Sequence record: phage_1
Length of the DNA stretch: 64,000 bases
Reading direction: 5' to 3' (one strand)
Shown: positions 13,582-28,600 of the stretch, piece by piece
How the letters are laid out: the number at the start of each line of letters is the position of its first letter
Position numbering within the stretch: position 1 is the stretch's first letter
Notes under the pieces: model-generated
What the model was told of the DNA's origin: nothing
Database searches by the model: none
The model's input: the letters and a program-made list of their open reading frames with translations, nothing else
Made by a program: the position numbers and the translations under genes

Positions 13582-13605
13582 CTAAGAAATTAGTAGTTTC
13601 TAAGA

Positions 13606-13660
13606 AATAAATAAAAGGTACCTACCTCCCTTCGGGGAGGTAGGGCCTTTATTTTCTTTG
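13606..13660. terminator. Bidirectional terminator (family copy 2); ends the long minus-strand tail/rSAM run
   Basis: CCTACCTCCC-TTCG-GGGAGGTAGG flanked by A- and T-runs. Confidence 0.8.
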
Positions 13661-13661
13661 C

Positions 13662-14333
13662 TTACATGCCGAGTGACTCGGACAATGTTTTTAATCCGGT
13701 GTAATCGCGCTTTTCAGCTAACTCACGGATTTGGCGTTTGTTATCTGCCATTGCTGAGTGCAACACTTGGTCACGTGCAACAATAGCGGCCAGCAACGCT
13801 TTACATTGGGCTACTGTAAACGGACTGTGCTTAGTATTCAGCGTATCGAGCCAGTATTCTGGTGCGGTATCTGCCTGAATGTATTGACCGAGGATGGTAC
13901 GCGACGATTCATCGGCTTGAAAGTGACTACCTTCAAACTCGATATAACCATGGCGCTCATCTTCGTAGCGGTGGTCGAGTTCCAACAGCATCTTCTGCAC
14001 GTCTTCGTAAATGTAACGTGCGGTAGATTTCAGATTCCCGCGAATTTCGTCGAGGTCAATCTCCAGCACATTAGCAATAAACTCTTTCGTGCGTTTCAAT
14101 GTGAAGTTAGCTTCAATCTCCGACATCTCATACAGCTTCATGCGTGCCAGGGCTTCTTTATCAGACATCCCTTCGATGAGATGGTAATGGAGTAATGCAC
14201 AAAATCCGGTACGACCCTGATCCTGCGCACCGATTCGTTCCATGAAATTACCGTGACGATCAATCGGCAAATCACGCTGGAAATAACNGGCGCGGATCTC
14301 TTCGTTCGTTAAGCTTTTGTCAGTAACAGACAT
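13662..14333 (-). CDS. DUF4376-like tail-fibre assembly protein with N-terminal extension
   Basis: C-half FQADESSRTIL....YWLDTLN..PFTVAQCKALLAAI..RDQ.LH fits the DUF4376 pattern. Confidence 0.65.
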   Translation of the reverse strand: MSVTDKSLTNEEIRAXYFQRDLPIDRHGNFMERIGAQDQGRTGFCALLHYHLIEGMSDKEALARMKLYEMSEIEANFTLKRTKEFIANVLEIDLDEIRGNLKSTARYIYEDVQKMLLELDHRYEDERHGYIEFEGSHFQADESSRTILGQYIQADTAPEYWLDTLNTKHSPFTVAQCKALLAAIVARDQVLHSAMADNKRQIRELAEKRDYTGLKTLSESLGM

Positions 14334-14875
14334 TCGTCCTCCTCAATCAGGCCAAGTTCTAACAACAAACCGAAGTCCAGCATCTGGAAGTCCTGATCGA
14401 GGTTACCGGCCCACAACAGAGAAATGTTGTGTTGCTCTTCTTCTTCCAACTGCGGGAGCAGGTGTTCTTCGAAGATTTGACGTTCTGTGTAATAAGCGTC
14501 AACCGGGTTATTGGAGCGTAAGTTACGAATACGCATCCGCGGGAATGACAAGCCCAATGCCACTAAACTTTCAGGACTGGCTTCATCAATAGAGTGACGT
14601 AGCAGTTCGATTTTGTGGCGTGGGTATGCAAGCAGTCGCTTCTCAAAGCCAGGGTTGCGCTTTTCGATTTCCGCGACAGACTCGTGTCCTTTCTCAACGC
14701 AGTAGACCGGGATCATCACATTCAGCCCGTATTTAATCAACAGGCTTTGGATTTCATCAGTGAAGTCTTCCCCTGCCACAATTGCGTGCACATTGTACAG
14801 CTTGCTTTTGCGCAGGAAGCGATCGACCAAGTGCAGTTTACGCTTCGTAAAATTGTGAATCAGTATTGACTTCAT
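14309..14875 (-). CDS. Hypothetical protein of the rSAM cluster (188 aa)
   Basis: GGAG SD before ATG 14875 (MKSILIHNF); overlaps both neighbours. Confidence 0.6.
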   Translation of the reverse strand: MKSILIHNFTKRKLHLVDRFLRKSKLYNVHAIVAGEDFTDEIQSLLIKYGLNVMIPVYCVEKGHESVAEIEKRNPGFEKRLLAYPRHKIELLRHSIDEASPESLVALGLSFPRMRIRNLRSNNPVDAYYTERQIFEEHLLPQLEEEEQHNISLLWAGNLDQDFQMLDFGLLLELGLIEEDECLLLTKA

Positions 14876-16166
14876 TCTGGGCTCCGTTTTGTAATTTTTC
14901 TGCTTCGGCACGTTGGCGTACACAACGTGAACAATAGCACATGGATTTATCATGCAAATCTGATGCGCGAGTCGTACCAGTTTTCTGATACCAATATTCC
15001 GCCGCCATCAGCTTCGCAGTAGTCCAACCACACTGACGACGCTCGGCGTGATACGCTTTACGGTCTTCCAGTGTACCTTCACCGTTTTCGTACGATGCTG
15101 CTGCGCAGCTACCGCAGCTGTGTTTCATCGGACACCCTAAACAAGTTTCTGGGTAGTTGGTGTACTGCGTTTGAATCTCTTCTAACAGCTTACCGCCGTC
15201 CAGGCTCACAAACTCACGACCGACCAGTTCCGCTACAGCAGAGCGGGAAGTTACCGTGGACATGAAACGGTTACAACCGTAAATCTTGCGATCAAAGCCG
15301 AGACAGGTCATGTGCGTCAACGTACCGCAGTACGGTTTCAGGCGTTCTGGGTCGAGACGAACAGAGTCGTCATGTAAGAGTTTGTCACGCCAATCCGGGT
15401 CCCAAGTTGCCATAAAGTTCAGGCCATCCGGGATGATGTGCGTAATCGTGTTACGCGGGTTGGTGTGCAGACCCTTCTCAATCCAGTAGTCCATCACGTC
15501 CATCATCTGGTTCGCGATATCCAACGCCATATGGCGCGGCAGGATATCTTCGTACGTCACGTTACCAGAAATGGTACCACCGCCGGACATGTCAATTAAC
15601 GATTTCATGCTGGCGGCATAGTGCGGCAATGTATCGATCGTAAACGTCGCCTTTACGCCCAGTTCAGCGATGCCAACACTCTTCAGATAATTGTAACCGC
15701 GTACCGCAGCTTCGTACGACCCTTCACGCGTCGTGGTAAAGATACGATATTTGTCATGGACTTCAGGTAAACCATCGATGGAGACCCCAATAGACAGTTT
15801 GTCTTTCCAGCGCTCGATAATTTCTTTGTTCAGCGGACGGTCCAGAAGCGTACCGTTCGTGGAGATACTGAACATATACGGGCGATTGTGTTCTGCGCAT
15901 AACTTCTCTGCGGTTTCAAAGGCCGCCAAAAGAAGTTTAGGCTGCATGAACGGCTCACCACCGATGATATCGATGATGACTTCAACGTTCGGGATATCTT
16001 TATCACGCTCGAAACAAGCGTGGATAAAATCAATCACGTCTGCTACTTTGTTGTTACGCGGATATTTACGCTCGTAGCAGTATTCGCAGTCCAGGTTACA
16101 TGACAAGTTAGTCACAACCTGATACGTGCGTGGTGTGTACTGGATTTGCTGTTCGTTATTACTCAT
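14838..16166 (-). CDS. Radical SAM/SPASM peptide maturase
   Basis: CNLDCEYCYE (CxxxCxxC), IGGEP, SISTNGTLL, SIDGLPEVHDKYR; C-terminal CG..H.TC..YGCNRF..CLGCPMKHSCGSCAA..QC auxiliary-cluster Cys. Confidence 0.9.
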   Translation of the reverse strand: MSNNEQQIQYTPRTYQVVTNLSCNLDCEYCYERKYPRNNKVADVIDFIHACFERDKDIPNVEVIIDIIGGEPFMQPKLLLAAFETAEKLCAEHNRPYMFSISTNGTLLDRPLNKEIIERWKDKLSIGVSIDGLPEVHDKYRIFTTTREGSYEAAVRGYNYLKSVGIAELGVKATFTIDTLPHYAASMKSLIDMSGGGTISGNVTYEDILPRHMALDIANQMMDVMDYWIEKGLHTNPRNTITHIIPDGLNFMATWDPDWRDKLLHDDSVRLDPERLKPYCGTLTHMTCLGFDRKIYGCNRFMSTVTSRSAVAELVGREFVSLDGGKLLEEIQTQYTNYPETCLGCPMKHSCGSCAAASYENGEGTLEDRKAYHAERRQCGWTTAKLMAAEYWYQKTGTTRASDLHDKSMCYCSRCVRQRAEAEKLQNGAQNEVNTDSQFYEA

Positions 16167-17073
16167 TGTTCGCCGCCCGTTTACGCTTAGCAGAAATTAC
16201 ACGGTTGATGTAGTTATACGCATCAACGCCGATAGAACGCGCCAGGCGATTACAGCCGACTTCCAATATCTCTGGGGCGTTCTGAATTTGCTCCTGCGTA
16301 CCGTCGGCGTTAAGCCACAGCACTTCACTGCACGTGTTGCACTCGGTATCGAACATTTTACTGATCGCAAGCCCACATTCAGAATCGTTCTGCATGTTAA
16401 GGCGTTCGATATTGTCGAGTATTTTCCAATACCCGTACATGAAGTTCATGACGTGGTCTGGCGATAACGGTTTCGGCATCATCGCATCAAACAACAACGA
16501 CACACCACCTGGACGGTAATGATAGATTGCTCGGTGCAGCTCGATGAAATCTTCGTACCAGCGTTTATCGCCTAACTGGTCACGCGTCATCACACCCCAG
16601 GTGTAATAATTGTCCAGCTCGTACAGCACTTCCAGCGCTTCGTGATTACCACCGTTTACAAAGTTCATAAACGGACGTTCCGACTTCTTGTAGCCGTCAA
16701 TGGACACAAAGATAAGGTCGAACTGTTTCAGCAACGGCAGATGTGATTTACGCATCTTTAAACCGTTGGTGTACATGTGATGACGGAGGTTCGGATGAGA
16801 CTCCTTCAACTCGTTCACGAAGTCTTCAATCTTACGCTGCGCTAACAGCGGCTCACCGCCCGTCCAATGAATCTCACCGATATCCGGATTCTTCTCTAAA
16901 ATCGAGAGAATCTCTTCACGTTGAAACTCACGAGAAGTATCTTCTCTATCCATGTAATAAGCCCCTCCACAGAAGCTACAGTCTAAGTTACACTTAGAAG
17001 TTGCGACAACCGACAGAATTGACGGTTTGTCGTACAGTTCAGACGAGATCCTGGATTCTACTTGATCTGTCAT
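16159..17073 (-). CDS. Second radical SAM protein (short, reduced C-terminal Cys domain)
   Basis: CNLDCSFCGG, WTGGEPLL, YTNGL, VSIDG; C-term CNTC...GCNR. Confidence 0.85.
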   Translation of the reverse strand: MTDQVESRISSELYDKPSILSVVATSKCNLDCSFCGGAYYMDREDTSREFQREEILSILEKNPDIGEIHWTGGEPLLAQRKIEDFVNELKESHPNLRHHMYTNGLKMRKSHLPLLKQFDLIFVSIDGYKKSERPFMNFVNGGNHEALEVLYELDNYYTWGVMTRDQLGDKRWYEDFIELHRAIYHYRPGGVSLLFDAMMPKPLSPDHVMNFMYGYWKILDNIERLNMQNDSECGLAISKMFDTECNTCSEVLWLNADGTQEQIQNAPEILEVGCNRLARSIGVDAYNYINRVISAKRKRAANNE

Positions 17074-17094
17074 TGCAGGTTGCTCCAGTATTTT

Positions 17095-17982
17095 TTAAAT
17101 ATAATCAATGGCGAATAAAGGATCTTCGTCTACGTTAGCGCCAGGCACCAGTAACATCGGGTCGTGATAGGCAGCTAAAATTTTGTTCAGGTCGGCGTGT
17201 CTTTCGTTCAGACGTTTCAAATCGGCCAACGTTACCGAACGACCACGAATCTCAGAAACAGCTTCTGCTTCTTCTTTCGTTAAATCCACCTTCGTTAAGA
17301 GGAAACTTACCAGCTTACTCAAATCCGCTTCTGTCGCCGGGTAATCCCCATATCGGGTTTGAACCAGGTGTTGCATCCACGGCTTACGAATACGTTTGGT
17401 GATTTCAAAATCGTCAGTCAGCGCATACCAGACAGAACGCTTTTTATCCCACACGAACTTATAGCTATACGCCATCATGTCCGCTAAACGGGTGATGCCG
17501 AGTTCTTTATACCCCTCGATATCGATGTATGGTTCGGTGTCGAAATACGTTTCCGTATCGGCAGGTACCAGTACAAAGTAGTAAGGGAACGAGCCCAGAT
17601 AGTCCGGACTCCACCAACGGCGCGCCATCGGTTTTGCTTCAAGTTCGTCAAACGGTGTAAACATCAGTTCTAAATCGACGCTGTTGTTCAAAATCCCTTC
17701 GCTGAAGAAATACTTACCGTCGACTAACACGCCACGAGAGTTACCATCGCCGTTAAAGATAACGATGGCCTCTGCAACCATATCACGGATCTTAAACGTA
17801 TTTTCTACGGTGTAGTTCTTCTTGTCGGTCAAGAAGCGACCACGAACCTTTGGCCACTCACCAGGAATCTGTGCAATCAGTCTGACTTTGTCAGCAAGGT
17901 GCGCACGCACTGAATCTGGGGAAGATAGATGCAGCGGGTGGTTGAATGTGGTTTTATACGCAAGATGCAAATCGTTTTTCAT
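17095..17982 (-). CDS. Hypothetical protein of the rSAM cluster (295 aa)
   Basis: Long clean ORF with SD between peptide genes and rSAM genes. Confidence 0.65.
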   Translation of the reverse strand: MKNDLHLAYKTTFNHPLHLSSPDSVRAHLADKVRLIAQIPGEWPKVRGRFLTDKKNYTVENTFKIRDMVAEAIVIFNGDGNSRGVLVDGKYFFSEGILNNSVDLELMFTPFDELEAKPMARRWWSPDYLGSFPYYFVLVPADTETYFDTEPYIDIEGYKELGITRLADMMAYSYKFVWDKKRSVWYALTDDFEITKRIRKPWMQHLVQTRYGDYPATEADLSKLVSFLLTKVDLTKEEAEAVSEIRGRSVTLADLKRLNERHADLNKILAAYHDPMLLVPGANVDEDPLFAIDYI

Positions 17983-18004
17983 TTAATACTCCGAACGTTT
18001 TCTG

Positions 18005-18211
18005 TTATCGATTCCCCGCTCCACGGCTACAGCTTCCGCTGCAGGACCAGCTACACCCACCATTACAGTTATAGTGAGAAAGCGGTAAGCCAGCCAGGTT
18101 ATTTGTGGTCGACACGGTGCCCTGGTTAGCGATATAGTTGTTTGCCTGTGCGGTTGTAATGTAACCTTCTACCGTAACGAGACGGTTTCGAATAGTCTTG
18201 AGACTGATCAT
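18005..18211 (-). CDS. Cys-rich precursor-like peptide 3 (68 aa, 4 Cys)
   Basis: Leader ISLKTIRNRL..; core SHYNCNGGCSWSCSGSCS; GGAGG SD. Confidence 0.8.
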   Translation of the reverse strand: MISLKTIRNRLVTVEGYITTAQANNYIANQGTVSTTNNLAGLPLSHYNCNGGCSWSCSGSCSRGAGNR

Positions 18212-18226
18212 ATAAGCCTCCGTCAG

Positions 18227-18631
18227 TTAGGAGTTAGGACCTGAACAACCACCAGAACACGCGCCGGAGCAGTTTGCGGAACAGGATTTGCCACAGCCGC
18301 CAGAGCAGTTACCAGTACACGTTCCGCTACAACCACCAGAACATGAAGAGCTGCAACCCGTACAGCTGCTGCTACAGCCCGATACACAGTTTGCGGAACA
18401 AGTCGACCCACAACCACCCGTAGCAGACCCAGTACACCCGCCAGAACAACTCGAGCAACTAAAAGAGCATGTGCCACCACAGTCATAGTGCGAACGGCCT
18501 TGACCTGCGAACAAGTCGGCGTTATTCGTAGCTTTATTGCGAATGTAGTTTTGCACATTCGTGGTGTTCTTTAAAGCGTTTGCATCGATCGTGTTTAATC
18601 GGTTATTCAGTTCTTTTAATCCAATTGCCAT
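18227..18631 (-). CDS. Cys-rich CxxxC-repeat precursor-like peptide 2 (134 aa, 20 Cys)
   Basis: Leader IGLKELNNRL..; core SHYDCGGTCSFSCSSC(SGGC..)n. Confidence 0.85.
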   Translation of the reverse strand: MAIGLKELNNRLNTIDANALKNTTNVQNYIRNKATNNADLFAGQGRSHYDCGGTCSFSCSSCSGGCTGSATGGCGSTCSANCVSGCSSSCTGCSSSCSGGCSGTCTGNCSGGCGKSCSANCSGACSGGCSGPNS

Positions 18632-18641
18632 TTAATCCCCC

Positions 18642-19034
18642 TTAGCGACCTGAACAGCCGCCGGNGCAGGCCCCGGNGCAGTTTGCGGAANAGNAGCCNC
18701 CNCAACCNNCTGAAAAGTTACCGGTACAGCTACTACTGCAACCACCAGAACAACCAGAGCAACCAGAACAGTTACCGCCACACGTCGAAGAACAGCTACC
18801 GATACAAGAAGCAGAACAGCTTCCTGAACAGCTCGAACAGCCATGCGAGCAACCGTTAGAGCANGTCCAAGAACATGTCCCGCCGCAATCTAGCTGTGCT
18901 TTCGTCCAACCCCCAAATCGGTCTGCTGCATTATGGGCTTTAGAGGCCACTTGCGCCTCGATGCGGGGGCCTGTCGCCATGTTAGCTTCGACNATCTGGA
19001 CGCGGTTTCTGACGTCTTTAATAGATATCGCCAT
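18642..19034 (-). CDS. Cys-rich CxxxC-repeat precursor-like peptide 1 (130 aa, at least 18 Cys)
   Basis: Leader ISIKDVRNRV..; core LDCGGTCSW.CSNGC..; some N bases. Confidence 0.85.
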   Translation of the reverse strand: MAISIKDVRNRVQXVEANMATGPRIEAQVASKAHNAADRFGGWTKAQLDCGGTCSWXCSNGCSHGCSSCSGSCSASCIGSCSSTCGGNCSGCSGCSGGCSSSCTGNFSXGXXGXXSANCXGACXGGCSGR

Positions 19035-19099
19035 TACGCTTCCTTAAAAAGTAGAACGAGCGGACTATGTCCATAAACATAGTCCGGCTCGTAAACAAG

Positions 19100-20302
19100 T
19101 TACTTAGTACCCGCTTCAGCTTGAACATCGTCGCGCGAGGTGAGGCTGTTGTTGACGTGAACAGCAGCCTGCACAACACCTCCATACTGTTTATGGAGGT
19201 AATTCGGGTGTGGGTTATCCGCAGCCGCATGGTTCGCCAGATTCTGGTTTGCCTGCGAAATTGCGTTGGTGTTGTTTATAACCTGAGTTTTAAGACTGTT
19301 GATTTGTCCTTGCAGGTTATCAATTTGCTGTTGGAAGTCTTTGCCCTGATTCTCAAGATCCGTGACGCGCTGATTTGTTTCATTCAGTGCAGACTGAAGA
19401 TCGTTAACCATCTTCTGTAATTGCAACACCAGAGAATTAAGGTTAGCTAATGCTAACGACATTTTCTGGTAATTTTGAGCAACCACGTTAAGCTGGTCGT
19501 TCCACGCGGCTAACGAAGCCACAATTGCATCGATGCGTTGCCCCAACGCCGTGTCTGCTNCTCTTAAGTCGCCGATATCGTTGATAGTGGCGTCAATGGC
19601 AGTCTGTACACTTTGAATCAGGGCACGAATCTCCGTCTCCGTCAGGCCATTAACCTGATGAATGTCGAGATTGTGTACGTTACCTTCGGCGTTGATGTGT
19701 GTATTTAAGGCGTCGAGGAAGTCGTTTCTCAGACCGTCCAGAATACCTTTAATTTCTTCCAGCTGTACTGCAGAGCCGGAGTTAATCGCATCTTTAATCC
19801 CCGCGAGTACGGTAATGATATACTCAAAACCGTAGATATCGCCAAGGTCTTTATACGTCGGGGCGGACGGGAACGTATCGGGTACGTTTCGAAGATCCTT
19901 GAAGTCCACCACACGGTCTTCAATTTTCAGCGACGCAATCGCTTGTCGGATGCCTTCGACGTTCGCGGACTGAAAACCACCAACGACTTGCGCAGAGACT
20001 TCGATATCAGTAGGAATGGCCGAGTTAGTTACCACCACACCCATGACCACTTCGCGGTTCTTGGTCATTTTCTGATATGCAGTATGTGCAAAAATCAGTT
20101 CGTAGTCTGTGCCGCGTTTGTACGGGTAGACACCTGGTTTATTCGCAGCTGCCAAGCGGAAGGTATCCGCGTAGAAAGCTCCGTCAGGAAAAGCAAAAGC
20201 CCGGTTAACTTTACCAGAACCTAACGTAATACGCCGTGTAACGGCGTTCGACGTTAATGTCCCGGTAAGGTCGAGCGGGTACTGATGAATGATTTCGGCC
20301 AT
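19100..20302 (-). CDS. Coiled-coil tail fibre / virion structural protein
   Basis: N-term YPLDLTG typical of phiKZ-like tail paralogs; long heptad region; HAAADNPHPNYL fibre His motif; AAGGAG SD before ATG 20302. Confidence 0.7.
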   Translation of the reverse strand: MAEIIHQYPLDLTGTLTSNAVTRRITLGSGKVNRAFAFPDGAFYADTFRLAAANKPGVYPYKRGTDYELIFAHTAYQKMTKNREVVMGVVVTNSAIPTDIEVSAQVVGGFQSANVEGIRQAIASLKIEDRVVDFKDLRNVPDTFPSAPTYKDLGDIYGFEYIITVLAGIKDAINSGSAVQLEEIKGILDGLRNDFLDALNTHINAEGNVHNLDIHQVNGLTETEIRALIQSVQTAIDATINDIGDLRXADTALGQRIDAIVASLAAWNDQLNVVAQNYQKMSLALANLNSLVLQLQKMVNDLQSALNETNQRVTDLENQGKDFQQQIDNLQGQINSLKTQVINNTNAISQANQNLANHAAADNPHPNYLHKQYGGVVQAAVHVNNSLTSRDDVQAEAGTK

Positions 20303-20349
20303 TGCCAAACTCCTTTGATTGGGGCTTCCTTGCCCCATAGCGCTATCTG

Positions 20350-23300
20350 TTAGGTACGGAACATAAGATTGACCTGGATAATATCAGGCTGTTGACGTCC
20401 TCTCTCGTTCACCCAATCGTGTGCAATCGTTAACGTAAGATCATCGCCTTCCCACGACACGATCGGTGGTGGGAATAAACCCTGAGCGCCCGTGGTAACA
20501 ACCGGGATTGCACCTGCCACATTCGTAAACGTATAGCTACGACTGTTCAGAACAACCGGTGTGCCGTGGGTCTCTCCCGGCTGTGGTAAGATTTGAATCT
20601 TACTATCCGAAAGATCGGTGGTGATTGGTAGACCCCCAGCGTCCGTGAAAAGCCAAGAGCAAATATNCTGGTTNGCTGTTTCGAGCGCTGAAGAACTCTT
20701 CACAGCCGCGAAAGTAAAGGTGCACGGCACGCCTGCTGGCAGAGAGTGCTGTTTGTGGTGCACGGTATGTGGTGACGGCAATAACACTTCTGGATTTTCG
20801 TCAATGTTAACATCCGTACCTTCCGCCTCGACGTTGTAGAAAAAGCCATCCACCGCCTCCCATGGGGCAACGTGGACATTAAAGGTCGTTTCTACTCCCG
20901 GTGTACCTGGGACGACGAATTTACTTTGCACCACCACCATCATAGTTCTTGAGGTCGGTGAGAAAGCGGGCGTTGGAATACCTACCCACTCCATTCCCAA
21001 CGATGCCGCTTCACCGTTCTCATCAGCCGTTACCGTCGCGATTGTTGTAGGATGTTTCCAAAACGCCCCCGACTTGTTTGCCTGAGTAAACGCCGGCAAA
21101 GTTTTCAAGCCTTCGAAACGTTTGGACACCATCGCTTTACCGCGACGCTGTGCGTCAGATACGGTATAAAGCAACTGACTATCCAGATAGCCTTTCGTAG
21201 CATCGATCGACAAAGGACCCATCGCTTCTTTACGCAATGGTGCCAGTCTGCCCGTTGCTGCATCCCTTCCCACTTCCACATCATGCTTATTCTCAACCGC
21301 CGCATGTTCCAACAGTTGTTTCACCGCCCCCAATCGCTTAGCATGTTCGACGTTAGTCTCGACGACTCGTGACGAGCCCGTTTTAACATACCCGATATAG
21401 AGTTCCGTTTCAGTGTCTGGATGTTGAATCACGTCCATTACGTACTTCGGTGTACCATTTTCTACCTTGGCGTGCAGGTAGAATGTCCGGTTCTGATGGT
21501 TTGTTGGAAATGCTGCGCTGAGGTCAATATACCACGTAGGCAGCTTATAAGTGCTCGAGCCGAAACGCAGGTCAACTTCCTCAGTCACATATACCAGCCA
21601 ACCTTCGGCTGTTTCCACNCCAGCAATGACGACCGATTCAGTCGGGCCACTAAAATTAGGAGCCGCGACAAAATCACTCGACGACATTGCGATACCACCA
21701 CAATAGACGTAGTCGAGAGATGAGTTGTGTAGCATCACCTGATCACGATGAGCCAGATAAGCTGGGCTGACTGGAGTGTGTGATGGTGCCATGCGTCCAA
21801 TGCCGTGTGGAGCAGAAGAACGCGTCCAGGTACCATTAGACAGCGTAAGACCAACACCGTAGTTAAGCGCACCCAAGTCGCCAATTTGGCGCAAGGTTAA
21901 CGTGTGTGGAAGATACAACCCGAACTGCGTACCATCTACTGACACCAGTGTAGGTTGTCCCGGCCGGCGTGTTTTTCCTCCCGTTATCTCACCCAACGTA
22001 GCATAGTTCAAGCCATAGTCGAGGTTGTTATAGAAGTCAAACAATGCCAATATCGCTGCCGGGAATGTTACCTGCCCGTTACTGATTGTTGGTTTCAGTG
22101 TAAAGTAGTAGATATCCAACAAGTTAACATTGTTCACAGTACGCGTACATGCTACTTGTGCTAACGTGAGCGGTGTGGCCGTACCAATGCCGATGAACCA
22201 AATGGAGAACAGTGCCTTTCCGGCGTTATTTGCGGCAAGGATAAATTCCGAAGCATAACCATTCGCAGCGCCAGCCGGTGCGCCGTCGATAATCATCTGC
22301 TTCATCTTATCCCATTCGGCTTGTGACAGCGTCAACCGATCGGCATGAATCGTGAAAGTGCCAGAAACGTTGTGGTAAGGGAATGTTTCTGGTCCTGTGC
22401 AATACCAGCCGTTTAACTCTGTACCAGGCGACGCCGGTGTAACAATGTGGCACATCTGCGACAGATTCTCGTACGTGGTAGAATCTACTACACGACGATT
22501 GTTAGTTGGTCCATACCCCGCTTTACCTGAATAAGTGGTGTTCGGATCAAACTCAACTTCAATTGCCAAACGGGTACGCGGCTGTGACAACCAGATAAGT
22601 CTGGAATTCGCTCCCAGAGTCAGCGGATACGCCATGCCCAGCTCGTAGATAGAACCACGACCTTGGTTTAACATTACCGCACTAAAACTTCTGGCAGTGA
22701 AGTTGTAGTCGCACGACAGGTACTCGTACCAACTCACACCGTCATCTAACGTTGTAATCGTGACATAAGGCATTAGGTCGCGATCGCCTGCATGTCCTTG
22801 CGAAACGATATACTTGTCTTGCGATGTTGCAAAGGTTCGGTTATTAGCTTGACCTTCGCCCCATTTCCGGCTCGGAATCCCAATCTCAGCGCCACCGTTA
22901 TAACGAACCGTGGTAAGATCGGCCACAATAGGGAATCGATCAGCACCTTCCAGCGTTATCGTCATTGAACTACAATCAACAACAAAGCTTGACACCCATT
23001 GTTTAAAGTTAATAGTTTGCCCTGTAGTAGAAGCAAACCAAACCGTTGGAGTTAAACCAACACGAAAGTTCAGCCCATCCACACCAATCGCGTGATTACA
23101 TTCCGGACCATGGACAAATTTCGTCGCACTATTCCACTTCGCCGATGCGTCTGCGTAGATTTGTGTTACTGGCGCTACCAACACATCTGTATCAGAACGN
23201 TTCTGACCCTGACGCAAGTAGATATTATCTCCCGACGTTAACATCCCACCTGTTAACACATCCGCCACAAACGTGTTGCTACCACCCAGATTAAGTTCGT

Positions 23301-25533
23301 CGAGTGCGATGCTACGCATACTCACGAAATAGTCACCGGAGGTAAGCACAGTACGGAGCAGATAAACCCGCTCGTTGCAAACGATCAAATCGTTTGTTGA
23401 TGGATCAACAACCCATGGAGCGGTTGTAACTGACACCGGCCCGTTACCATTTCGGTAATCGCCCAACTGAACTTTAACAACACGATGATGTTTTGCATGG
23501 TCAATGGTGCCGTCAAAGATGACCAGGTAGTACGCACCGTCACTGCCTAAGCAGATCATTGCATCTGTACCGGTAATCACAATAGCAACCAGATTCACCC
23601 CAGGATACGCCGACATTCCAGCGGGTCGATAACGTACGGACGTCTGCTGCATATTTTCCAGCGTATTGCTTGGCGACACATCAGCATAGGCGTAATAGAT
23701 AGCCCAGTCACCTGGTGGATTCCCGTTAGAACCATTACGGAGCGAGTAAACCTTACCAGACTCGTAACGCGCCAAACCTTTCTGCCAGGTTTGGTTTTTG
23801 GTATACCCTTCGTAGTTCCCCTGGACAGGTATAGGCAAGAAGTTATTGTTGCCGTACGATGATCCGCCGACAGTCCATGCGGGCAACAGCGTAGCAATCT
23901 TGTCATTCAGTGTGTCAATCTTTTGTTCAAGCAAGAAGCCCTGACGCGAAGTGACCATCTTATCCGAGGTAGTGTCGATTGCATCCCACAGTTTAGCCAA
24001 ACCTGTAACAGACGTGGATGCGTACGGCACGTTATCGAGATCTGCAATGGTGTGGGTGTGCGTTGTAAGCGCTTTGCCTGATAGCACGGTGCGCAACGCA
24101 TTAGTAACCGGTTTCTCCAGCGGCCCGGTATTGTTCATCTTCTCAATACCGAAATCTGCCGCGGTTAAGGTCAGATGCATCTGCCCGTTTGAATCTAATA
24201 CAAACCCTTTACCATTGACTGTATACGTGTCGTCCACATATCCGTCGAGTTTGTTCTTCAAGTCAGTAACAGCTTTTTGGGAAATCGCTGTGGANGCCGC
24301 AGCGGACGCCGAAAGGTTAGTAATCGCAAACAAACCCTGCACAGTTGTGGTTGCTGCAGGCAGCTCCGCATTCATGTAAACTTTGTTTGTTTCTTTACCA
24401 GAGCCGTAAATCTTCAACGTGTCGCTGGACTTGAAGTAGGCGTTTGCTGGAAGTATCTTCACCGAGGTCAAGTACATCTTAACCATATCCGGTGTAACGA
24501 GATACACGCTGTTATACACAGGTGCAAGCACACCTGCATCATAAGCGCCCCACTTGTCACCTGCTTTACCCGAGTGAACCCAAAGCGTGTTCAGACCAGC
24601 ACTGAACTCCGTAGCGATACCCGGTTCGTTGTTATCCCGGTCAGCTTTTAATACCAGCGGTTTTGTCGAGGTGATAATGAACTTCTCACCCTTCATGCTG
24701 ATAACGTGACCAGACGTTGTTTGGAACGTAATCGCGTCGTTATTCAGAACACGCATACGGCCCAGTAAATCGCCCAGGGTATTATCCAGAAGCATGTCAA
24801 CGTGTTTCTGTTGGATGCCACTGGTAGACATTAACGTCACTAACTCTGCCAGTGTACGTCCAAACGCTTTAGTCGCATCCACGGCCTTACCGAGCACAGG
24901 GAGTGCGCCAATGTCACCGCAGGTGTAACCATGTGCATTTTTAATCAGGTGGTGTTGATACATTTCGTCATCAAACACCTGTTTACCGTTCTGATAAATC
25001 AAATCGGTAACTTCGGCAAATGCCTCATCCAGTTCGTGGGCGCGCTCTAAAATACCCAGACGGATATCTTCCAACGCCTTTACGATTTCATCGCGAAGAA
25101 TCGCTTCTTCGAGATCTTTTGGCGGGTCGATTGGCGAGATAATCGGTGGATATTTCATCAGCTCAGACCAATCGCAGTTGCGCGGGTCTTTCATATCCGT
25201 CTTAACCAGATACTTGCCGATTTCAGAAGCAGGGATGCGGTACTGTCGACCAACCGACAACAACTCGTATTCTACCTCTGTGGCGTTCAGCAGCATTATG
25301 CTGCCGTATATTGCATCGTTCTCAGCCTCGGCTAATTCCTGGAAGTAATGTCCTAAGAAATAATCAAGACCTTCTATTAACTTGCGTTTGGTTCCGGTTA
25401 TTTTATCGGTAACGGTTAACGTTAACCCGATGCGATAGAACGGTGCTTCGACGGGAATGACCGTCGAATAACGGTTCGGGTAAGTAGCGGTACTGAGGGT
25501 ACCGTTAAACTGCGCCGCATCTTCTCTCGGCAT
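20350..25533 (-). CDS. Giant tail fibre / baseplate-attached protein (about 1727 aa)
   Basis: H..KNAHG.T motif, ATTTVQGL and ASTSVTGL fibre repeats, LTAADFGIEKMNNT..KPV motif; AGGAG SD before ATG 25533. Confidence 0.7.
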   Translation of the reverse strand: MPREDAAQFNGTLSTATYPNRYSTVIPVEAPFYRIGLTLTVTDKITGTKRKLIEGLDYFLGHYFQELAEAENDAIYGSIMLLNATEVEYELLSVGRQYRIPASEIGKYLVKTDMKDPRNCDWSELMKYPPIISPIDPPKDLEEAILRDEIVKALEDIRLGILERAHELDEAFAEVTDLIYQNGKQVFDDEMYQHHLIKNAHGYTCGDIGALPVLGKAVDATKAFGRTLAELVTLMSTSGIQQKHVDMLLDNTLGDLLGRMRVLNNDAITFQTTSGHVISMKGEKFIITSTKPLVLKADRDNNEPGIATEFSAGLNTLWVHSGKAGDKWGAYDAGVLAPVYNSVYLVTPDMVKMYLTSVKILPANAYFKSSDTLKIYGSGKETNKVYMNAELPAATTTVQGLFAITNLSASAAXSTAISQKAVTDLKNKLDGYVDDTYTVNGKGFVLDSNGQMHLTLTAADFGIEKMNNTGPLEKPVTNALRTVLSGKALTTHTHTIADLDNVPYASTSVTGLAKLWDAIDTTSDKMVTSRQGFLLEQKIDTLNDKIATLLPAWTVGGSSYGNNNFLPIPVQGNYEGYTKNQTWQKGLARYESGKVYSLRNGSNGNPPGDWAIYYAYADVSPSNTLENMQQTSVRYRPAGMSAYPGVNLVAIVITGTDAMICLGSDGAYYLVIFDGTIDHAKHHRVVKVQLGDYRNGNGPVSVTTAPWVVDPSTNDLIVCNERVYLLRTVLTSGDYFVSMRSIALDELNLGGSNTFVADVLTGGMLTSGDNIYLRQGQXRSDTDVLVAPVTQIYADASAKWNSATKFVHGPECNHAIGVDGLNFRVGLTPTVWFASTTGQTINFKQWVSSFVVDCSSMTITLEGADRFPIVADLTTVRYNGGAEIGIPSRKWGEGQANNRTFATSQDKYIVSQGHAGDRDLMPYVTITTLDDGVSWYEYLSCDYNFTARSFSAVMLNQGRGSIYELGMAYPLTLGANSRLIWLSQPRTRLAIEVEFDPNTTYSGKAGYGPTNNRRVVDSTTYENLSQMCHIVTPASPGTELNGWYCTGPETFPYHNVSGTFTIHADRLTLSQAEWDKMKQMIIDGAPAGAANGYASEFILAANNAGKALFSIWFIGIGTATPLTLAQVACTRTVNNVNLLDIYYFTLKPTISNGQVTFPAAILALFDFYNNLDYGLNYATLGEITGGKTRRPGQPTLVSVDGTQFGLYLPHTLTLRQIGDLGALNYGVGLTLSNGTWTRSSAPHGIGRMAPSHTPVSPAYLAHRDQVMLHNSSLDYVYCGGIAMSSSDFVAAPNFSGPTESVVIAXVETAEGWLVYVTEEVDLRFGSSTYKLPTWYIDLSAAFPTNHQNRTFYLHAKVENGTPKYVMDVIQHPDTETELYIGYVKTGSSRVVETNVEHAKRLGAVKQLLEHAAVENKHDVEVGRDAATGRLAPLRKEAMGPLSIDATKGYLDSQLLYTVSDAQRRGKAMVSKRFEGLKTLPAFTQANKSGAFWKHPTTIATVTADENGEAASLGMEWVGIPTPAFSPTSRTMMVVVQSKFVVPGTPGVETTFNVHVAPWEAVDGFFYNVEAEGTDVNIDENPEVLLPSPHTVHHKQHSLPAGVPCTFTFAAVKSSSALETXNQXICSWLFTDAGGLPITTDLSDSKIQILPQPGETHGTPVVLNSRSYTFTNVAGAIPVVTTGAQGLFPPPIVSWEGDDLTLTIAHDWVNERGRQQPDIIQVNLMFRT

Positions 25534-25554
25534 TGCAAACACTCCTAATCTGTA

Positions 25555-25595
25555 ATAAAACGGAGACCGCCCTCCCAATAACGGAAGGGCGGTTT
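25555..25595 (-). terminator. Internal terminator/attenuator between two giant fibre genes
   Basis: Imperfect ACCGCC..GGCGGT stem followed by T-run on minus strand. Confidence 0.5.
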
Positions 25596-25628: not shown

Positions 25629-28600
25629 CTAAGAGGCCCACTCACCCGAGTTGTTGCCTTCGTTTCTACGTTCAGTATCCAACGTTTGTAAAATCCAATC
25701 CCATGTCCTGGTGGGGATGTGGAATGGATTACGCTTCTCAATGAGAATCGTCTCGCCACCCGTGCGAAGTTCCACCGGTGTCGTTTCAGTAATCACGAAC
25801 ATCGGATTACCACTACTACCCACACCGTTAATAGTGAACTTCGCTTGTAGCGGCGGCACAGAACCTTCCGGAGGCACGAACACGATGTGAATTGGCTGCA
25901 TCGGTTTCGTGCGGGCAAGAGTCCCAGATATCTGAACAGCTGTTGTCGATGCACTGAAAGGTATAACATTACCCGGAATTTTCTCACTACCCACGACGAT
26001 ATATCCAGGGTAGTTAGAGAGCATTGTCCCATTTACCGACACAAAACGCTCAGTTTGAGTTGGGCGATAAGCCCGCATAAAGCCGTACTTCCATTCACCA
26101 CCGTTAGACGTATAGTCTGCAGGAGCCGACTCAAGTAGCGGAGCACCACGTTTCTGCAGCCCTTTATAAAACGGCGCTGGGAGTTTACCGTTCGGTGCAA
26201 GTTCCGGATAACCCTCACTTGCAGCAGACATCGTGATGTATTCCGTAACCGGGTGATCAACGTTATCTCCAAATGACGCAAAAGGTACCGTTGTTACTGT
26301 CATCTCCTCGTGGCCGGAAGACTGTCTATCTGGTGTCCTTTCAATATACGACTCAAACAGTGAACGTAAATAATGGAAACGATTTATATCCACATCTGAG
26401 ATGATCGGCTGCATCAAACCGTGGTTAATAGTCACGTTGTCTCCAGTTTCAATACCGGAAACGTGGATGGCTAGCGCCCCACCTTTAAAGTAATCGATCG
26501 CATCAAACGGAATGTCGTATTCCATTTCGTAAACCTGCACCAGCGGATTGGCTATCAACTTAGAAACCATTGAGATGCGCAGTACCTGCGTATCAACAAT
26601 GTATCGATAACGTACAAGCCAACGATCTCCAAGCGGCGCAAGCTCACTATCGGTATGAACCGAAAGAAAATCTAAACACTCGGTAGATTGGCTCGTCAGG
26701 TTTTTAATTACCCTCGGATTTTCAAGCACCTTATTTGTAACACTGCCCTGCGTGGTCGAGATGATGCCTCCAGTTGCTTGGTTATAAGGAGACGTGATGA
26801 AGCCACAATTCAATTCTGGACGATTGCCACTCCATCTCAGTACCCTAGTCTTGCTTTTATCATCTGCAGACGGGGCCATGAAGTTTAATGTGATATCGCG
26901 ATCGCGAACAGTTTGCGCTTCCGACAAATCAACATCGACCACCACAGAACCTTCAAACGTCGCCATCCCTTTTTCTTTCGGGTTGCTTGGTGTAAACCAG
27001 CAGTACGGTGATGCGCTTTCTGTGGAGACAACCGCTCCAACAAACACTAGGCTTGAAATGGTGCTATCAAATTTATAATCGAATAACCCTCGGTCTAATC
27101 GAATATAGTGGTTACCAGAAACTGGACTATTAGGGTACGCATAAAGCCACTGTTTAGGCAACGGATCGACTTTGTTTAGCGGTAACATTTTTGGGTTATC
27201 CGTCAACGACCAGTCGGCATTACTCACTCCGTGTGCCAGACGTGTTTCGAAGTGCCGTTTAAGTTCGGACGCCATGCCAAAATCAAACGTCGTTTCAAAC
27301 TCGTAAGTCGTACCTGCAACCAATCCCGTCTCTGGTACATCAATATGTCCGATATAGCCGCGTTCCAAGTTAATACCTTCCGTGTCCACAATAGGTTCGG
27401 CGCGCGAATATAACGCATCGGTTATCATGTTCACATAGAGGTAATGCCTTAAACCATTCGGCGTCTTAACAAACTCCTGCAGGCGGGCAACTTTGGTGTT
27501 TTTATCCGAGGCCCCAACCGCAAAGTCACCGTCGTAAATTGTGAAACGAATTGCGGCTGCTTTAGCGCTATCGTTACACTCGGCACGGAATGCTAAGCAG
27601 TGTTGCTTCCACCCCTCCTTGACAGTCGCCTCCAGATACCCCGCTTCTGTAATACCCGCACCGATAATTTCACCGTCCAGATAAACAGAAACAGCACCAC
27701 CGCCACGAACCCAAATCCGCAGCTTACCAGAGTCGCAACGAACCCACGTTTTCGCCAAGAGGTTAACGACTGACAAATCACCCATTCCGGTTGTCGTTAA
27801 ACCAATCTGCGCACCGTAGTTCGTTTCCGGGACGGCAACCTCAAACCCACTAAAATCAATACCGGCACCGGTATTAATTACCGCGTTCTGCCACGTTCTT
27901 TCCATACGGTTATCTGGAGAGAACCACTGGAACATCGGTGTGGTTTGCAGGTCTATCGAACCAGATACCGTCCCCTCTTTACGTGCGCCATTTAACAGAT
28001 AGAAATAATTCAAATCCGTTATGGCGAGTGTGGTACGTGCTGACCCCACAGTCCAAGTCTTACCACGCACAGCGGCAAAATCGGTCACGGAATCCTCTTT
28101 CGCGTTTGCTAGCGCAGCTGCAACTACGTCTAAACGTTTTGACAAATCGTTCAGAACGTTCGGGGTAACGCCGCGATTACCCGACAAGCCGTTTAGGTTG
28201 GTAGAATATCGAGCGATACCGGGAACTGTTTGAGAAGCCGTTGGGATCTGTAAATCGGCGAAGTTGTGATGATGGCCTTTATCGCTAAGACCGGTAACTG
28301 CTTCTGCCAACGCATCAGAAAGTGGTTTATCGACGTCAGCTGTGTTATCAGCCAAGTCCAGACCCAAATCCTTTTTCGTTAGCGTTCGGCTACCAGTGTC
28401 CATCGGCTGGTTATTCAGCAGCGTTGTCTTCCTGACGTACGAAGACAGATCACCCTCGTACGGTAAGAGCGAAGCTGGGGTGGCTGCTTGTCCTTTGACT
28501 ACATCGCTCGGCTTATCAGTCAGCGTCACAACGCCGGGTTCAGAGGTCGTGGCGGGTTTGGCTGTAACCTTCCCGGTGACGGGATCGGCTTTTGACCCTT

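What the first reader, a model, noticed from the sequence alone, without database searches (positions are those of the whole stretch)
13662..20302. The rSAM/peptide cluster sits inside the tail-fibre operon: possible post-translationally crosslinked virion appendage
Seen: the cluster follows four tail-fibre genes on the same strand with only a 65-nt gap (19035-19099) and no obvious hairpin. It ends with a DUF4376-like tail-fibre assembly gene and a single terminator at 13606-13660. The peptide leaders have a heptad-like pattern (LKELNNRLNTIDANAL), like the coiled coil of the upstream fibre. Inference: the peptides may be structural fibre tips, whiskers or sensors that are crosslinked or metal-loaded by the rSAMs during late assembly. 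I know of no described rSAM-matured virion component.
Basis: inference. Interest (0 to 1): 0.8.

Follow-up and report, generated by a model that had tools for sequence, protein, structure and literature searches.

The report
Radical-SAM-matured cysteine-rich tail-fibre proteins
A giant Salmonella/E. coli phage carries three small, overlooked cysteine-rich proteins beside two radical-SAM enzymes in its tail-fibre genes; relatives fuse the same cysteine-rich tail to real tail-fibre proteins, so this is probably an enzyme-crosslinked fibre part, a kind of virion component not yet described.

Summary
The window is an SPN3US-like jumbo phage (Seoulvirus), 99.8% identical to Escherichia phage vB_EcoM_Lh1B.

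**Observation.** Almost all of it holds. The order is fibre genes, three Cys-rich peptide genes, an unknown protein, two radical SAM genes, another unknown, a DUF4376 (Tfa-type chaperone) gene and a bidirectional terminator. One claim is wrong: the 65-nt gap holds a strong hairpin, present in five genera, with a TATG in its loop.

**What it is.** rSAM1 is a SPASM enzyme. Its nearest family is the uncharacterised CXXX-repeat maturase family (TIGR04115), but it scores below the cut-off.

**Main new evidence.**
- In lambda-like prophages of Deferribacter and Desulfoluna, the same junction motif and Cys-repeat tail end a 257–302-aa protein. That protein sits just after the central tail fibre J gene, followed by gp165-like and two rSAM genes.
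- In 12 of 14 lineages examined the module lies among tail, baseplate or fibre genes.
- In some, the Cys tail ends 516–568-aa tail-like proteins.

**What is not shown.** Virion presence and the chemistry are untested. SPN3US virion proteomics could not detect the peptides, because SPN3US gp166 is called out of frame and the other two genes are unannotated.

**Verdict.** Interest is high.

The parts
29772..33485 (-). Fibre/baseplate protein, SPN3US gp170 homologue (context)
   Evidence: ORF of 1237 aa. gp170 is in the SPN3US virion proteome as a baseplate/tail-fibre candidate, paralogue family C.
25629..29759 (-). Fibre/baseplate protein, gp169 homologue (context)
   Evidence: ORF of 1376 aa. 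Virion protein and tail-fibre candidate.
20350..25578 (-). Fibre/baseplate protein, gp168 homologue (context)
   Evidence: ORF of 1742 aa. Called a tail protein and tail-fibre protein in PMC5105663 and PMC7411985.
19100..20302 (-). gp167 homologue: virion structural protein with a long C-terminal coiled coil
   Evidence: phrog_2163, E 8.8e-109. Many coiled-coil family hits over residues 235-400. In the SPN3US virion at 1.90 spectral counts per kDa and not assigned to the head.
19056..19092 (-). Conserved intergenic hairpin with TATG in its loop, followed by a U-rich stretch; lies 22 nt upstream of the first peptide's ATG
   Evidence: -24.3 kcal/mol, z -3.7. Hairpins at the same place in four other genera, with diverged stems and a TATG at the tip. 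TATG is the phiKZ late-promoter motif (PMC4666361). Its function here is inferred.
18642..19034 (-). pepA: 130-aa Cys-rich protein (about 50-aa helical leader, junction motif, C-x3-C repeats); contains masked N positions
   Evidence: phrog_6085, E 2.6e-35. Orthologues in all relatives are 127-131 aa with exactly 21 Cys. Good ribosome-binding site.
18227..18631 (-). pepB: 134-aa Cys-rich protein
   Evidence: phrog_6085, E 1.8e-41. Weak TIGR04114/TIGR04117 CXXX-repeat hits. SPN3US gp166 is the out-of-frame ORF over this gene.
18005..18211 (-). pepC: 68-aa protein, same leader with only one short Cys motif
   Evidence: phrog_6085, E 2.8e-25. A relative carries a 145-aa C-terminal extension (P0054 in L010).
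17095..17982 (-). gp165 homologue: conserved partner of unknown fold
   Evidence: phrog_8030, E 2.8e-150. Homologues accompany the system in the Deferribacter prophage (phrog_8030, E 1.9e-11) and in L008. AF2 pLDDT 90.5, with no match in PDB or BFVD apart from its own orthologue. Not in the SPN3US virion.
16159..17073 (-). rSAM2 (gp164 homologue): radical SAM enzyme with no SPASM-domain hit
   Evidence: Pfam Radical_SAM, E 9.8e-16, CX3CX2C motif. Paired with rSAM1 in all close relatives. An extra copy lies between pepA and pepB in L026.
14838..16166 (-). rSAM1 (gp163 homologue): radical SAM/SPASM peptide maturase
   Evidence: Best NCBIfam hits are TIGR04115 (3e-36) and PapB (1.1e-32), both below cut-off. 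Closest solved structures are CteB (5wgg, E 3.1e-10) and anSME. Eight invariant C-terminal Cys.
14309..14875 (-). gp162 homologue: conserved alpha/beta protein of unknown function
   Evidence: phrog_7988, E 8.2e-87. Homologues only in this phage clade. AF2 pLDDT 90.6, with only weak TIM-barrel-like and radical-SAM-like fold matches.
13662..14333 (-). gp161 homologue: Tfa-type tail-fibre chaperone candidate (C-terminal DUF4376)
   Evidence: PF14301, E 1.4e-09, above cut-off. Role of the domain taken from PMC7882524 and PMC10579305. Not detected in the SPN3US virion.
13621..13644 (.). Bidirectional intrinsic terminator between convergent genes
   Evidence: 10-bp GC-rich stem with T-runs on both strands. 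-27.5 kcal/mol, z -5.5.

Best explanation
The cluster is a tail-fibre accessory module.

**The proteins.** pepA, pepB and pepC are short fibre-like proteins. Each has an N-terminal helical segment of about 45 residues with heptad spacing. A junction motif follows (N-A-x-x-L/F-x-G, five residues, then C-x-G-x-C-S-W-x-C-S). The C-terminus is a rod of C-x3-C repeats made almost only of Ser, Gly, Cys and Thr.

**The proposed mechanism (inferred).**
- Late in infection the SPASM radical SAM enzyme rSAM1 works along the Cys repeats, helped by the smaller rSAM2 and probably by the conserved partner gp165.
- It most likely installs intramolecular thioether (sactionine- or ranthionine-type) crosslinks.
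- This would turn a floppy low-complexity tail into a compact, covalently braced structure.
- The N-terminal part is not a throw-away leader. It serves as the recognition handle for the enzymes and as the oligomerisation or attachment piece.
- The Tfa-type chaperone gp161 then helps mount the product on the fibre/baseplate apparatus built from gp167-170.

**Shown:** gene content, conservation, enzyme class, the fusions and the synteny.
**Inferred:** the crosslink chemistry, the timing, and the presence of the products in the particle.
For: 1. **Enzyme class.** rSAM1 has the CX3CX2C motif and a SPASM-like C-terminal Cys set that is invariant across six sequences. Its best families are the CXXX-repeat maturase family and PapB, and its best solved structure is the thioether-forming CteB.
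2. **Substrates next door.** There are three paralogous Cys-rich ORFs. 87% of Cys-Cys spacings are C-x3-C. pepA has exactly 21 Cys in every relative.
3. **Conserved synteny.** The order fibre, gp167, pepA/B/C, gp165, rSAM2, rSAM1, gp162, DUF4376 holds in Seoulvirus, Erskinevirus, Wellingtonvirus and Derbicusvirus.
4. **Same motif on fibre-position proteins.** In Deferribacter (L081) and Desulfoluna (L082) prophages the order is central tail fibre J (phrog_31, E 1e-148 and 3.5e-110), two small ORFs, then a 302- or 257-aa protein. That protein ends in the same junction motif and Cys repeats (phrog_6085). In L081 a gp165-like gene (phrog_8030, E 1.9e-11) and two rSAM genes follow. L082 has an unscanned 288-aa ORF in that place, then two rSAM genes (38-39% identical to rSAM1).
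5. **Larger fusions.** L028 has a 568-aa protein after a baseplate wedge gene. L029 has a 516-aa RCC1-propeller protein with a Cys tail. L083 has a 607-aa tail-fibre ORF with an abutting Cys-rich ORF.
6. **Unrelated phages.** Distant viral contigs with true TIGR04115 enzymes (L047, 446.5 bits) place the Cys-rich gene between tape measure, tail-fibre and baseplate genes. Of 14 lineages examined, 12 have a tail-module context.
7. **No processing or export genes.** No peptidase or exporter was found in any cluster.
8. **Tfa-type chaperone** ends the cluster.
9. **Precedent.** A SPASM enzyme crosslinking a full-size Cys-rich protein is known: CrpC on CrpA (PMC13692751).
Against: - No direct evidence places the peptides in virions.
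- The 86-protein SPN3US virion list has none of gp161-166, although the correct peptide ORFs were not in the annotated gene set.
- rSAM1 scores far below the curated cut-offs of every named family, so the chemistry is extrapolated.
- The core has no Asp or Glu acceptors like those used by PapB, CrpC or QhpD.
- A short leader plus a Cys-rich core with a Gly-Gly at the junction also fits a classical released RiPP.
- The fibre-like nature of the N-terminal parts of the L081 and L082 proteins rests mainly on gene position. PHROG hits to tail-fibre families are weak (E 8e-4) and there are no PDB matches.
- One lineage (L051) is not in a tail module.
- A conserved hairpin separates the peptides from gp167, so co-transcription is not established.
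Confidence: 0.5

Rival explanations
1. A phage-encoded RiPP natural product. The three peptides are classical precursors. The leader guides the rSAM enzymes and is then removed, and the crosslinked Cys-rich cores are released at lysis. They would act outside the particle, for example against competing bacteria or phages or as a signal. Their place among the fibre genes would reflect only shared late timing.
For: Typical RiPP layout: several precursors, then maturases. A conserved leader of about 50 aa, a Gly-Gly at the junction and a repetitive core. The nearest enzyme families are RiPP maturases. The maturases and gp165/gp162/gp161 are absent from virions.
Against: No peptidase or exporter in any version of the cluster. 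The 'leader' is replaced by 200-460-aa tail-like proteins in relatives. pepC has almost no core, and in one relative it carries a 145-aa C-terminal domain. Recurrent tail-module context in unrelated phages. Core length and Cys number are strictly conserved rather than hypervariable.
Confidence: 0.15
2. A transient assembly factor. The crosslinked Cys-rich proteins act as scaffolds or caps that help the large fibres gp167-170 fold or trimerise, together with the Tfa-like gp161, and are shed before or at particle completion. They would be tail-fibre-linked but not virion components.
For: Tail-fibre context and the adjacent Tfa-type chaperone. Tail-fibre chaperone 'caps' that are transient are described for Alteromonas phages (title and abstract of PMC10579305). 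None of gp161-166 is in the virion list.
Against: In relatives the Cys tail is the C-terminal end of the fibre-position protein itself, not a separate helper. Heavy enzymatic investment (two or three rSAM enzymes) is odd for a discarded part. The virion list could not have included the peptides anyway.
Confidence: 0.15
3. A metal- or iron-sulfur-binding module rather than a crosslinked one. The Cys repeats would chelate metals or clusters, as fibre tips of other phages bind metal ions (from my own knowledge). The rSAM enzymes would then either modify another substrate, such as the large fibres, or load the metal sites.
For: 25% Cys with regular spacing. CrpA, the closest studied protein-size analogue, is suspected to bind metals (PMC13692751).
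Against: The nearest characterised enzymes form thioethers on Cys-rich substrates encoded beside them. Tight co-occurrence of a Cys-rich ORF with the rSAM in nearly every locus fits an enzyme-substrate pair. No metal chaperone or transporter lies in the cluster.
Confidence: 0.1

Closest known systems
CXXX-repeat peptide / radical SAM maturase system (NCBIfam TIGR04115 enzyme, TIGR04114/TIGR04117 targets)
   Same: A SPASM radical SAM enzyme lies next to proteins whose C-terminus is a run of Cys-x-x-x repeats. TIGR04115 is the best NCBIfam hit of rSAM1. Phage relatives L047 (446.5 bits) and L029 (340 bits) are at or near membership.
   Different: rSAM1 scores 125.6 bits against a cut-off of 350. 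A second rSAM and the gp165, gp162 and DUF4376 partners are added. As far as I know this family is defined by genome context only, with no chemistry or biological role. I found no paper on it in the library, nor one linking radical SAM enzymes to tail fibres.
CrpA/CrpC of Methanococcus voltae (TIGR04463; PMC13692751)
   Same: A SPASM radical SAM enzyme installs thioether (ranthionine) crosslinks on a full-size Cys-rich protein. Its N-terminal part engages the enzyme and its C-terminal part is repetitive. Paralogous substrates share the N-terminus.
   Different: A different enzyme family (57.9 bits against a cut-off of 525). CrpC has an RRE domain, whereas rSAM1 has none ahead of its cluster motif. 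CrpA repeats are 17 residues with C-x-x-Q/D acceptors. It is cellular, with a suspected metal role and no link to a virus particle.
PapB / ranthipeptides and CteB / SCIFF thioether maturases
   Same: They are the second-best family (PapB, 1.1e-32) and the closest solved structure (CteB 5wgg, 3.1e-10). Both form Cys thioethers on Cys-rich peptides.
   Different: Below cut-offs. The substrates here are 68-134 aa (up to 568 aa in relatives) and lack Asp/Glu acceptors. No leader protease or exporter. Tail-fibre context.
Tfa-type tail-fibre assembly chaperones (phage Mu U, Alteromonas V22 gp27; DUF4376)
   Same: gp161 has the DUF4376 domain above Pfam's cut-off and sits at the 3' end of a fibre gene block.
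   Different: Here a set of radical SAM enzymes and Cys-rich proteins lies between the large fibre genes and the chaperone. Which protein it serves is unknown.
QhpC/QhpD (quinohemoprotein amine dehydrogenase gamma subunit and its SPASM maturase)
   Same: A SPASM enzyme crosslinks Cys residues of a small protein that stays as a subunit of a larger assembly (cited as such in PMC13692751). TIGR03906 is among the hits.
   Different: Weak similarity (3.7e-15, rSAM domain only). Enzyme-subunit context, not a virion.

Membership tests
Radical SAM / SPASM peptide maturases (general) | CX3CX2C cluster motif and Radical_SAM domain | tested here: met
   PF04055 E 9.6e-15 (rSAM1) and 9.8e-16 (rSAM2), both above cut-off. 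Motifs are visible in the translations.
Radical SAM / SPASM peptide maturases (general) | C-terminal Cys set for auxiliary clusters (SPASM) | tested here: inconclusive
   rSAM1 has eight invariant C-terminal Cys in a six-sequence alignment (C280, C288, C298, C342, C345, C351, C354, C379). The PapB model aligns to position 319 of 330. Pfam SPASM itself was not reported for rSAM1, although it was for the relative in L047. rSAM2 has no SPASM hit.
TIGR04115 CXXX-repeat maturase | Score at or above the curated cut-off (350 bits) | tested here: not met
   125.6 bits, in two stretches, the best covering residues 18-235. Relatives: L047 446.5 (met), L029 340.1, L028 157, L081 155.
TIGR04115 CXXX-repeat maturase | Adjacent target with Cys-x-x-x repeats (TIGR04114) | tested here: inconclusive
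   Repeats are plainly present (87% C-x3-C), but TIGR04114 scores 16.3 and 13.7 against a cut-off of 20.
PapB-type ranthipeptide system | NF047865 score at or above 340; C-x3-Asp/Glu acceptor motifs in the core | tested here: not met
   113.6 bits. Asp and Glu do not appear in the core composition.
SCIFF/CteB-type sactipeptide or ranthipeptide maturase | N-terminal RiPP recognition element ahead of the rSAM domain | tested here: not met
   The cluster motif starts at residue 23 of rSAM1. The alignment to CteB starts at its residue 106.
TIGR04463 (CrpC) protein-crosslinking maturase | Score at or above 525 bits | tested here: not met
   57.9 bits, N-terminal half only.
Classical RiPP | Leader removed by a dedicated or shared protease; product exported | not testable with these tools
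   No protease or transporter family was found in the cluster or its relatives. Cleavage itself cannot be read from sequence.
Tfa-type tail-fibre chaperone | C-terminal DUF4376 domain, gene downstream of fibre genes | tested here: met
   PF14301 38.8 bits against 25, residues 121-205 of 223. It is the last gene of the block.
Phage tail fibre / virion component | Physical presence in purified particles | not testable with these tools
   The published SPN3US virion list lacks gp166. gp166 is the out-of-frame ORF, and pepA and pepC are unannotated.
Phage tail fibre / virion component | Homology or fusion to proteins at tail-fibre positions | tested here: met
   phrog_6085 plus the junction motif occur at the C-terminus of the proteins that follow central tail fibre J (L081, L082), follow a baseplate wedge gene (L028), or carry an RCC1 propeller (L029). 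A Cys-rich ORF also abuts the tail-fibre ORF in L083.

The most novel reading that the evidence does not exclude
A widespread and so far unrecognised class of phage tail-fibre ends. In these, a C-terminal Cys-x3 repeat rod is covalently crosslinked by dedicated radical SAM/SPASM enzymes encoded in the tail module. SPN3US-like jumbo phages would carry three free-standing 'mini-fibre' versions. That would make them the first enzymatically thioether-braced virion components, and it would give the orphan CXXX-repeat rSAM family (TIGR04115) a biological role.
Probability: 0.4. Interest if true: 0.85.

Novelty: new variant of a known kind. Interest (0 to 1): 0.75.

Why it matters
- **New to phage assembly.** Tail fibres are thought to reach their stability through folding, trimerisation, chaperones and sometimes bound metal ions. 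An enzyme-installed covalent bracing step that needs oxygen-sensitive iron-sulfur enzymes inside the infected cell would be new to virion assembly.
- **A role for an orphan family.** The CXXX-repeat radical SAM family has had no known function.
- **A second example.** It would add a case of RiPP-type chemistry acting on protein-size substrates, after CrpA/CrpC.
- **Annotation errors in a model phage.** Three conserved genes of SPN3US are mis-called or missing, so they have been invisible to every proteomic study of this phage.
- **Cheap to test.** Existing mass spectra can be searched again with the corrected ORFs.

Tried and rejected
- **Leader paralogues.** A leader profile searched against all ORFs of at least 60 aa in the window found only the three peptides. 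The claimed likeness to gp167's coiled coil has no sequence basis.
- **Leader in public proteins.** A search of 1.84 billion representative proteins gave 26 hits, nearly all from the same family. The 1061-aa hit P0070 is a repeat protein and looks like a chance match. The word-based search found only three proteins, probably because gene callers miss these ORFs.
- **gp165 fold.** A confident model, but no PDB match (best E 0.25) and only its own orthologue in BFVD.
- **gp162 fold.** A confident model with only weak TIM-barrel-like and rSAM-like matches. I assign no function.
- **PDB sequence searches.** gp165, gp162, pepB, the L082 fibre-position protein and the L028 protein gave nothing significant.
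- **tblastn.** The N-terminal 190 aa of the L081 protein against isolated phages gave only three short hits in archaeal viruses.
- **PADLOC.** Only generic rSAM-domain overlaps with viperin models. I rejected a defence-system reading.
- **TATG-loop hairpins.** Not enriched in the window (8 found, 7.5 expected), so this is not a general promoter signature here.
- **Covariation in the gap hairpin.** The MAFFT/RNAalifold count was uninformative because the alignment is not structure-aware. I rely on the individual folds instead.
- **Infected-cell proteome paper.** The SPN3US paper PMC6384053 is not held, so expression timing could not be read.
- **L008 upstream gene.** It looked to me like a lectin-type receptor-binding tail. 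Pfam gave no hit, so I make no claim.

Full report
**Identity of the window.**
The region 13600-20400 is 99.8% identical to Escherichia phage vB_EcoM_Lh1B and 97.8% identical to Salmonella phage SPN3US. SPN3US is the type member of Seoulvirus, a phiKZ-related jumbo phage. In SPN3US numbering the minus-strand genes run gp170, gp169, gp168, gp167, a mis-annotated stretch, then gp165, gp164, gp163, gp162 and gp161.

**Checking the observation.**
- The gene order, the strand, the 65-nt gap (19035-19099), the DUF4376 hit (PF14301, E 1.4e-9, above cut-off) and the terminator (13621-13644) are all as described.
- gp167-170 are virion proteins. gp168-170 are called baseplate/tail-fibre candidates in the SPN3US literature.
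- DUF4376 is the conserved C-terminal domain of Tfa-type tail-fibre chaperones, such as Mu U and Alteromonas V22 gp27 (PMC7882524, PMC10579305).
- One statement is wrong. The gap contains a 16-bp hairpin at 19056-19092 (-24.3 kcal/mol, z -3.7), followed by a U-rich stretch.
- The homologous gap folds into a hairpin in phiEaH2, Wellington, CR5 and Phobos as well. The stems have diverged, yet a TATG sits at the tip in every case.
- TATG, with its G as the start site, is the late-promoter motif of phiKZ (PMC4666361).
- The gap may therefore hold a terminator or attenuator after gp167, a late start site for the peptide genes, or both. That is inference.
- TATG-loop hairpins are not enriched in the window as a whole.

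**The three peptide genes are real, and public records call them badly.**
- All three match phrog_6085 (E 2.6e-35, 1.8e-41, 2.8e-25).
- They share a leader of about 50 residues and have good ribosome-binding sites.
- They are conserved as a set of three in Seoulvirus, Erskinevirus, Wellingtonvirus and Derbicusvirus.
- pepA has exactly 21 Cys and 127-131 residues in every relative examined. pepB has 20-23 Cys.
- Of the Cys-Cys spacings, 87% are C-x3-C and 13% are C-x2-C. The residue after Cys is Ser or Thr in 82% of cases. The core is 28% Ser, 26% Gly, 25% Cys and 9% Thr.
- SPN3US gp166 is the out-of-frame ORF lying over pepB (window 18223-18558). pepA and pepC are not annotated there. In Phobos and CR5, ORFs are called on the opposite strand.
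- This matters for the published virion proteome. It lists 86 proteins, including gp167-173, gp160 and gp157, and none of gp161-166.
- That absence bears on the enzymes, gp165, gp162 and the Tfa-like protein. It is silent on the peptides themselves.

**The enzymes.**
- rSAM1 (442 aa) has the radical SAM motif at residues 23-30, so no recognition domain precedes it. It also has a C-terminal set of eight invariant Cys.
- Its best NCBIfam hits are TIGR04115, the 'CXXX-repeat target family' maturase (3e-36), and PapB (1.1e-32). All are far below the cut-offs.
- The closest solved structures are the thioether-forming CteB and anSME.
- rSAM2 (304 aa) is a radical SAM protein with no SPASM-domain hit.
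- gp165 and gp162 gave confident AlphaFold models (pLDDT 90.5 and 90.6) but no informative structural neighbours.
- No peptidase or transporter is present.

**Comparative evidence that decides the reading.**
A profile of rSAM1 relatives was used to fetch loci from viral contigs and from bacterial genomes.

- *Prophages.* In Deferribacter abyssi (L081) and Desulfoluna butyratoxydans (L082) the order begins with central tail fibre J (phrog_31, E 1e-148 and 3.5e-110) and two small ORFs.
  - Next comes a protein of 302 or 257 aa.
  - In L081 a gp165-like protein (phrog_8030, E 1.9e-11), an rSAM2-like gene and an rSAM1-like gene follow (38-39% identity).
  - L082 has an unscanned 288-aa ORF in the gp165 place, then two rSAM genes.
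  - The 302- and 257-aa proteins end in the same junction motif and Cys repeats as the window's peptides.
  - By my own knowledge, this is the place where lambda-type phages keep their side tail fibre and its assembly gene.
- *Larger proteins with the same tail.*
  - L028 (a 213-kb viral contig) has a 568-aa protein with the motif and Cys tail at its C-terminus, after a baseplate wedge gene.
  - L029 has a 516-aa protein with RCC1 propeller repeats (Pfam E 2.5e-27) that ends in a Cys tail. A 115-aa paralogue with the same ending follows it.
  - In L083 a 607-aa ORF with many tail-fibre PHROG hits is directly followed by a 79-aa Cys-rich ORF in another frame.
  - L008 has a 211-aa precursor with an extra N-terminal domain of about 95 aa, followed by rSAM2-like, gp165-like and rSAM1-like genes.
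- *More distant viral contigs.* Their enzyme is a true TIGR04115 member (L047, 446.5 bits; L029, 340 bits).
  - Their Cys-rich proteins are 200-324 aa with up to 55 Cys.
  - In L047, L031, L053, L046 and L057 these genes lie among tape measure, tail-fibre, tail and baseplate genes. L057 has a tail protein upstream and an endolysin downstream.
  - L032 gave weak tail hits, L034 gave none, and L051 lies beside nucleotide-metabolism genes.
- *Tally.* Of 14 lineages examined, 12 have a tail-module context.
- *Variants within the SPN3US clade.* One relative has pepC with a 145-aa C-terminal extension (P0054 in L010). Two relatives have an extra rSAM2 copy between pepA and pepB.

**Interpretation.**
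- The 'leader' of the window's peptides is the remnant of, or the minimal form of, a fibre shaft. It has a short heptad-spaced helix and a junction motif.
- The Cys-repeat tail is a C-terminal fibre module that always travels with its radical SAM enzymes.
- The most economical mechanism is that rSAM1, with rSAM2 and gp165, crosslinks the Cys repeats into a covalently braced rod or knob. The product would then be mounted on the fibre/baseplate apparatus with help from the Tfa-like gp161.
- The nearest experimental precedent for protein-size substrates is CrpC acting on CrpA (PMC13692751).
- The chemistry, the timing and the presence of the product in the particle are all inferred.
- Rivals remain open:
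  - a released RiPP;
  - a transient assembly factor;
  - a metal-binding module.

**Literature.**
Ten searches of the full-text library found no paper that links radical SAM enzymes to tail fibres or describes these peptides. The library does not hold most subscription journals. The SPN3US infected-cell proteome paper could not be read.

**Verdict.**
The enzyme-substrate pair belongs to a known kind, so I rate this a new variant of that kind. Its setting as a tail-fibre maturation module is the new part.

- a generic tail-fibre motif;
- a variable-region-like pattern of lectin-type receptor-binding proteins;
- the usual SPASM cysteine spacing.

The motifs quoted here come from tool outputs, and the impression about the L008 upstream gene is marked as unsupported.

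The masked N positions in pepA were neither filled nor looked up. One script translation resolved a codon whose third base is N, purely through codon degeneracy.

Noticed in passing
window 18223-18558 (and 18632-18844), minus strand: Out-of-frame ORFs over the Cys-repeat DNA. SPN3US gp166 is the first of these, so the real peptide genes are mis-called or missing in SPN3US. In Phobos and CR5, ORFs are called on the opposite strand.
   Followed up: yes
L026:6543-7454 (also L012): In two metagenomic relatives (83% rSAM1 identity) an extra rSAM2-like gene of 303 aa lies between pepA and pepB. This hints that rSAM2-type enzymes are matched to particular precursors.
   Followed up: partly
L010:10001-10633 (P0054): In a 222-kb relative, pepC carries a 145-aa C-terminal extension of unknown fold. 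P0065 is a second variant of this kind.
   Followed up: partly
window 19056-19092 and the homologous gaps in L004-L007: A TATG sits at the tip of the conserved hairpin in all five genera although the stems differ. TATG is the phiKZ late-promoter motif, with G as the start site.
   Followed up: partly
window 25566-25593, minus strand: A strong terminator-like hairpin (12 pairs, 8 GC) lies between the gp169 and gp168 homologues. The fibre gene block is therefore punctuated by hairpins at more than one junction.
   Followed up: no
L083:6180-8244: A 607-aa tail-fibre ORF and a 79-aa Cys-rich ORF abut in different frames in a Thalassospiraceae MAG. This could be an assembly error, a frameshift or two genes. 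I left it as it stands.
   Followed up: no
L051:8789-10486: An exception to the tail context. A 276-aa Cys-rich ORF and a short rSAM-like ORF lie beside an anaerobic ribonucleotide reductase gene and a phosphatase gene.
   Followed up: partly
L036 (also L038-L045, L059): A group of 110-180-kb viral contigs carries a 108-aa Cys-rich ORF near the rSAM gene. In L036, the only one mapped, the surrounding ORFs are highly fragmented under table 11, which may mean a different genetic code.
   Followed up: no
Phage records SPFM5, 7, 9, 12, 14, 15 and others: These records match the cluster only in many small pieces (40 pieces, 37% coverage) at 99% identity, and their proteins appear truncated in the protein searches. 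They look like error-rich assemblies.
   Followed up: no
L008:3-629: The gene upstream of the 211-aa precursor looked to me like a lectin-type receptor-binding tail. Pfam gave no hit, so this is an unverified impression.
   Followed up: partly
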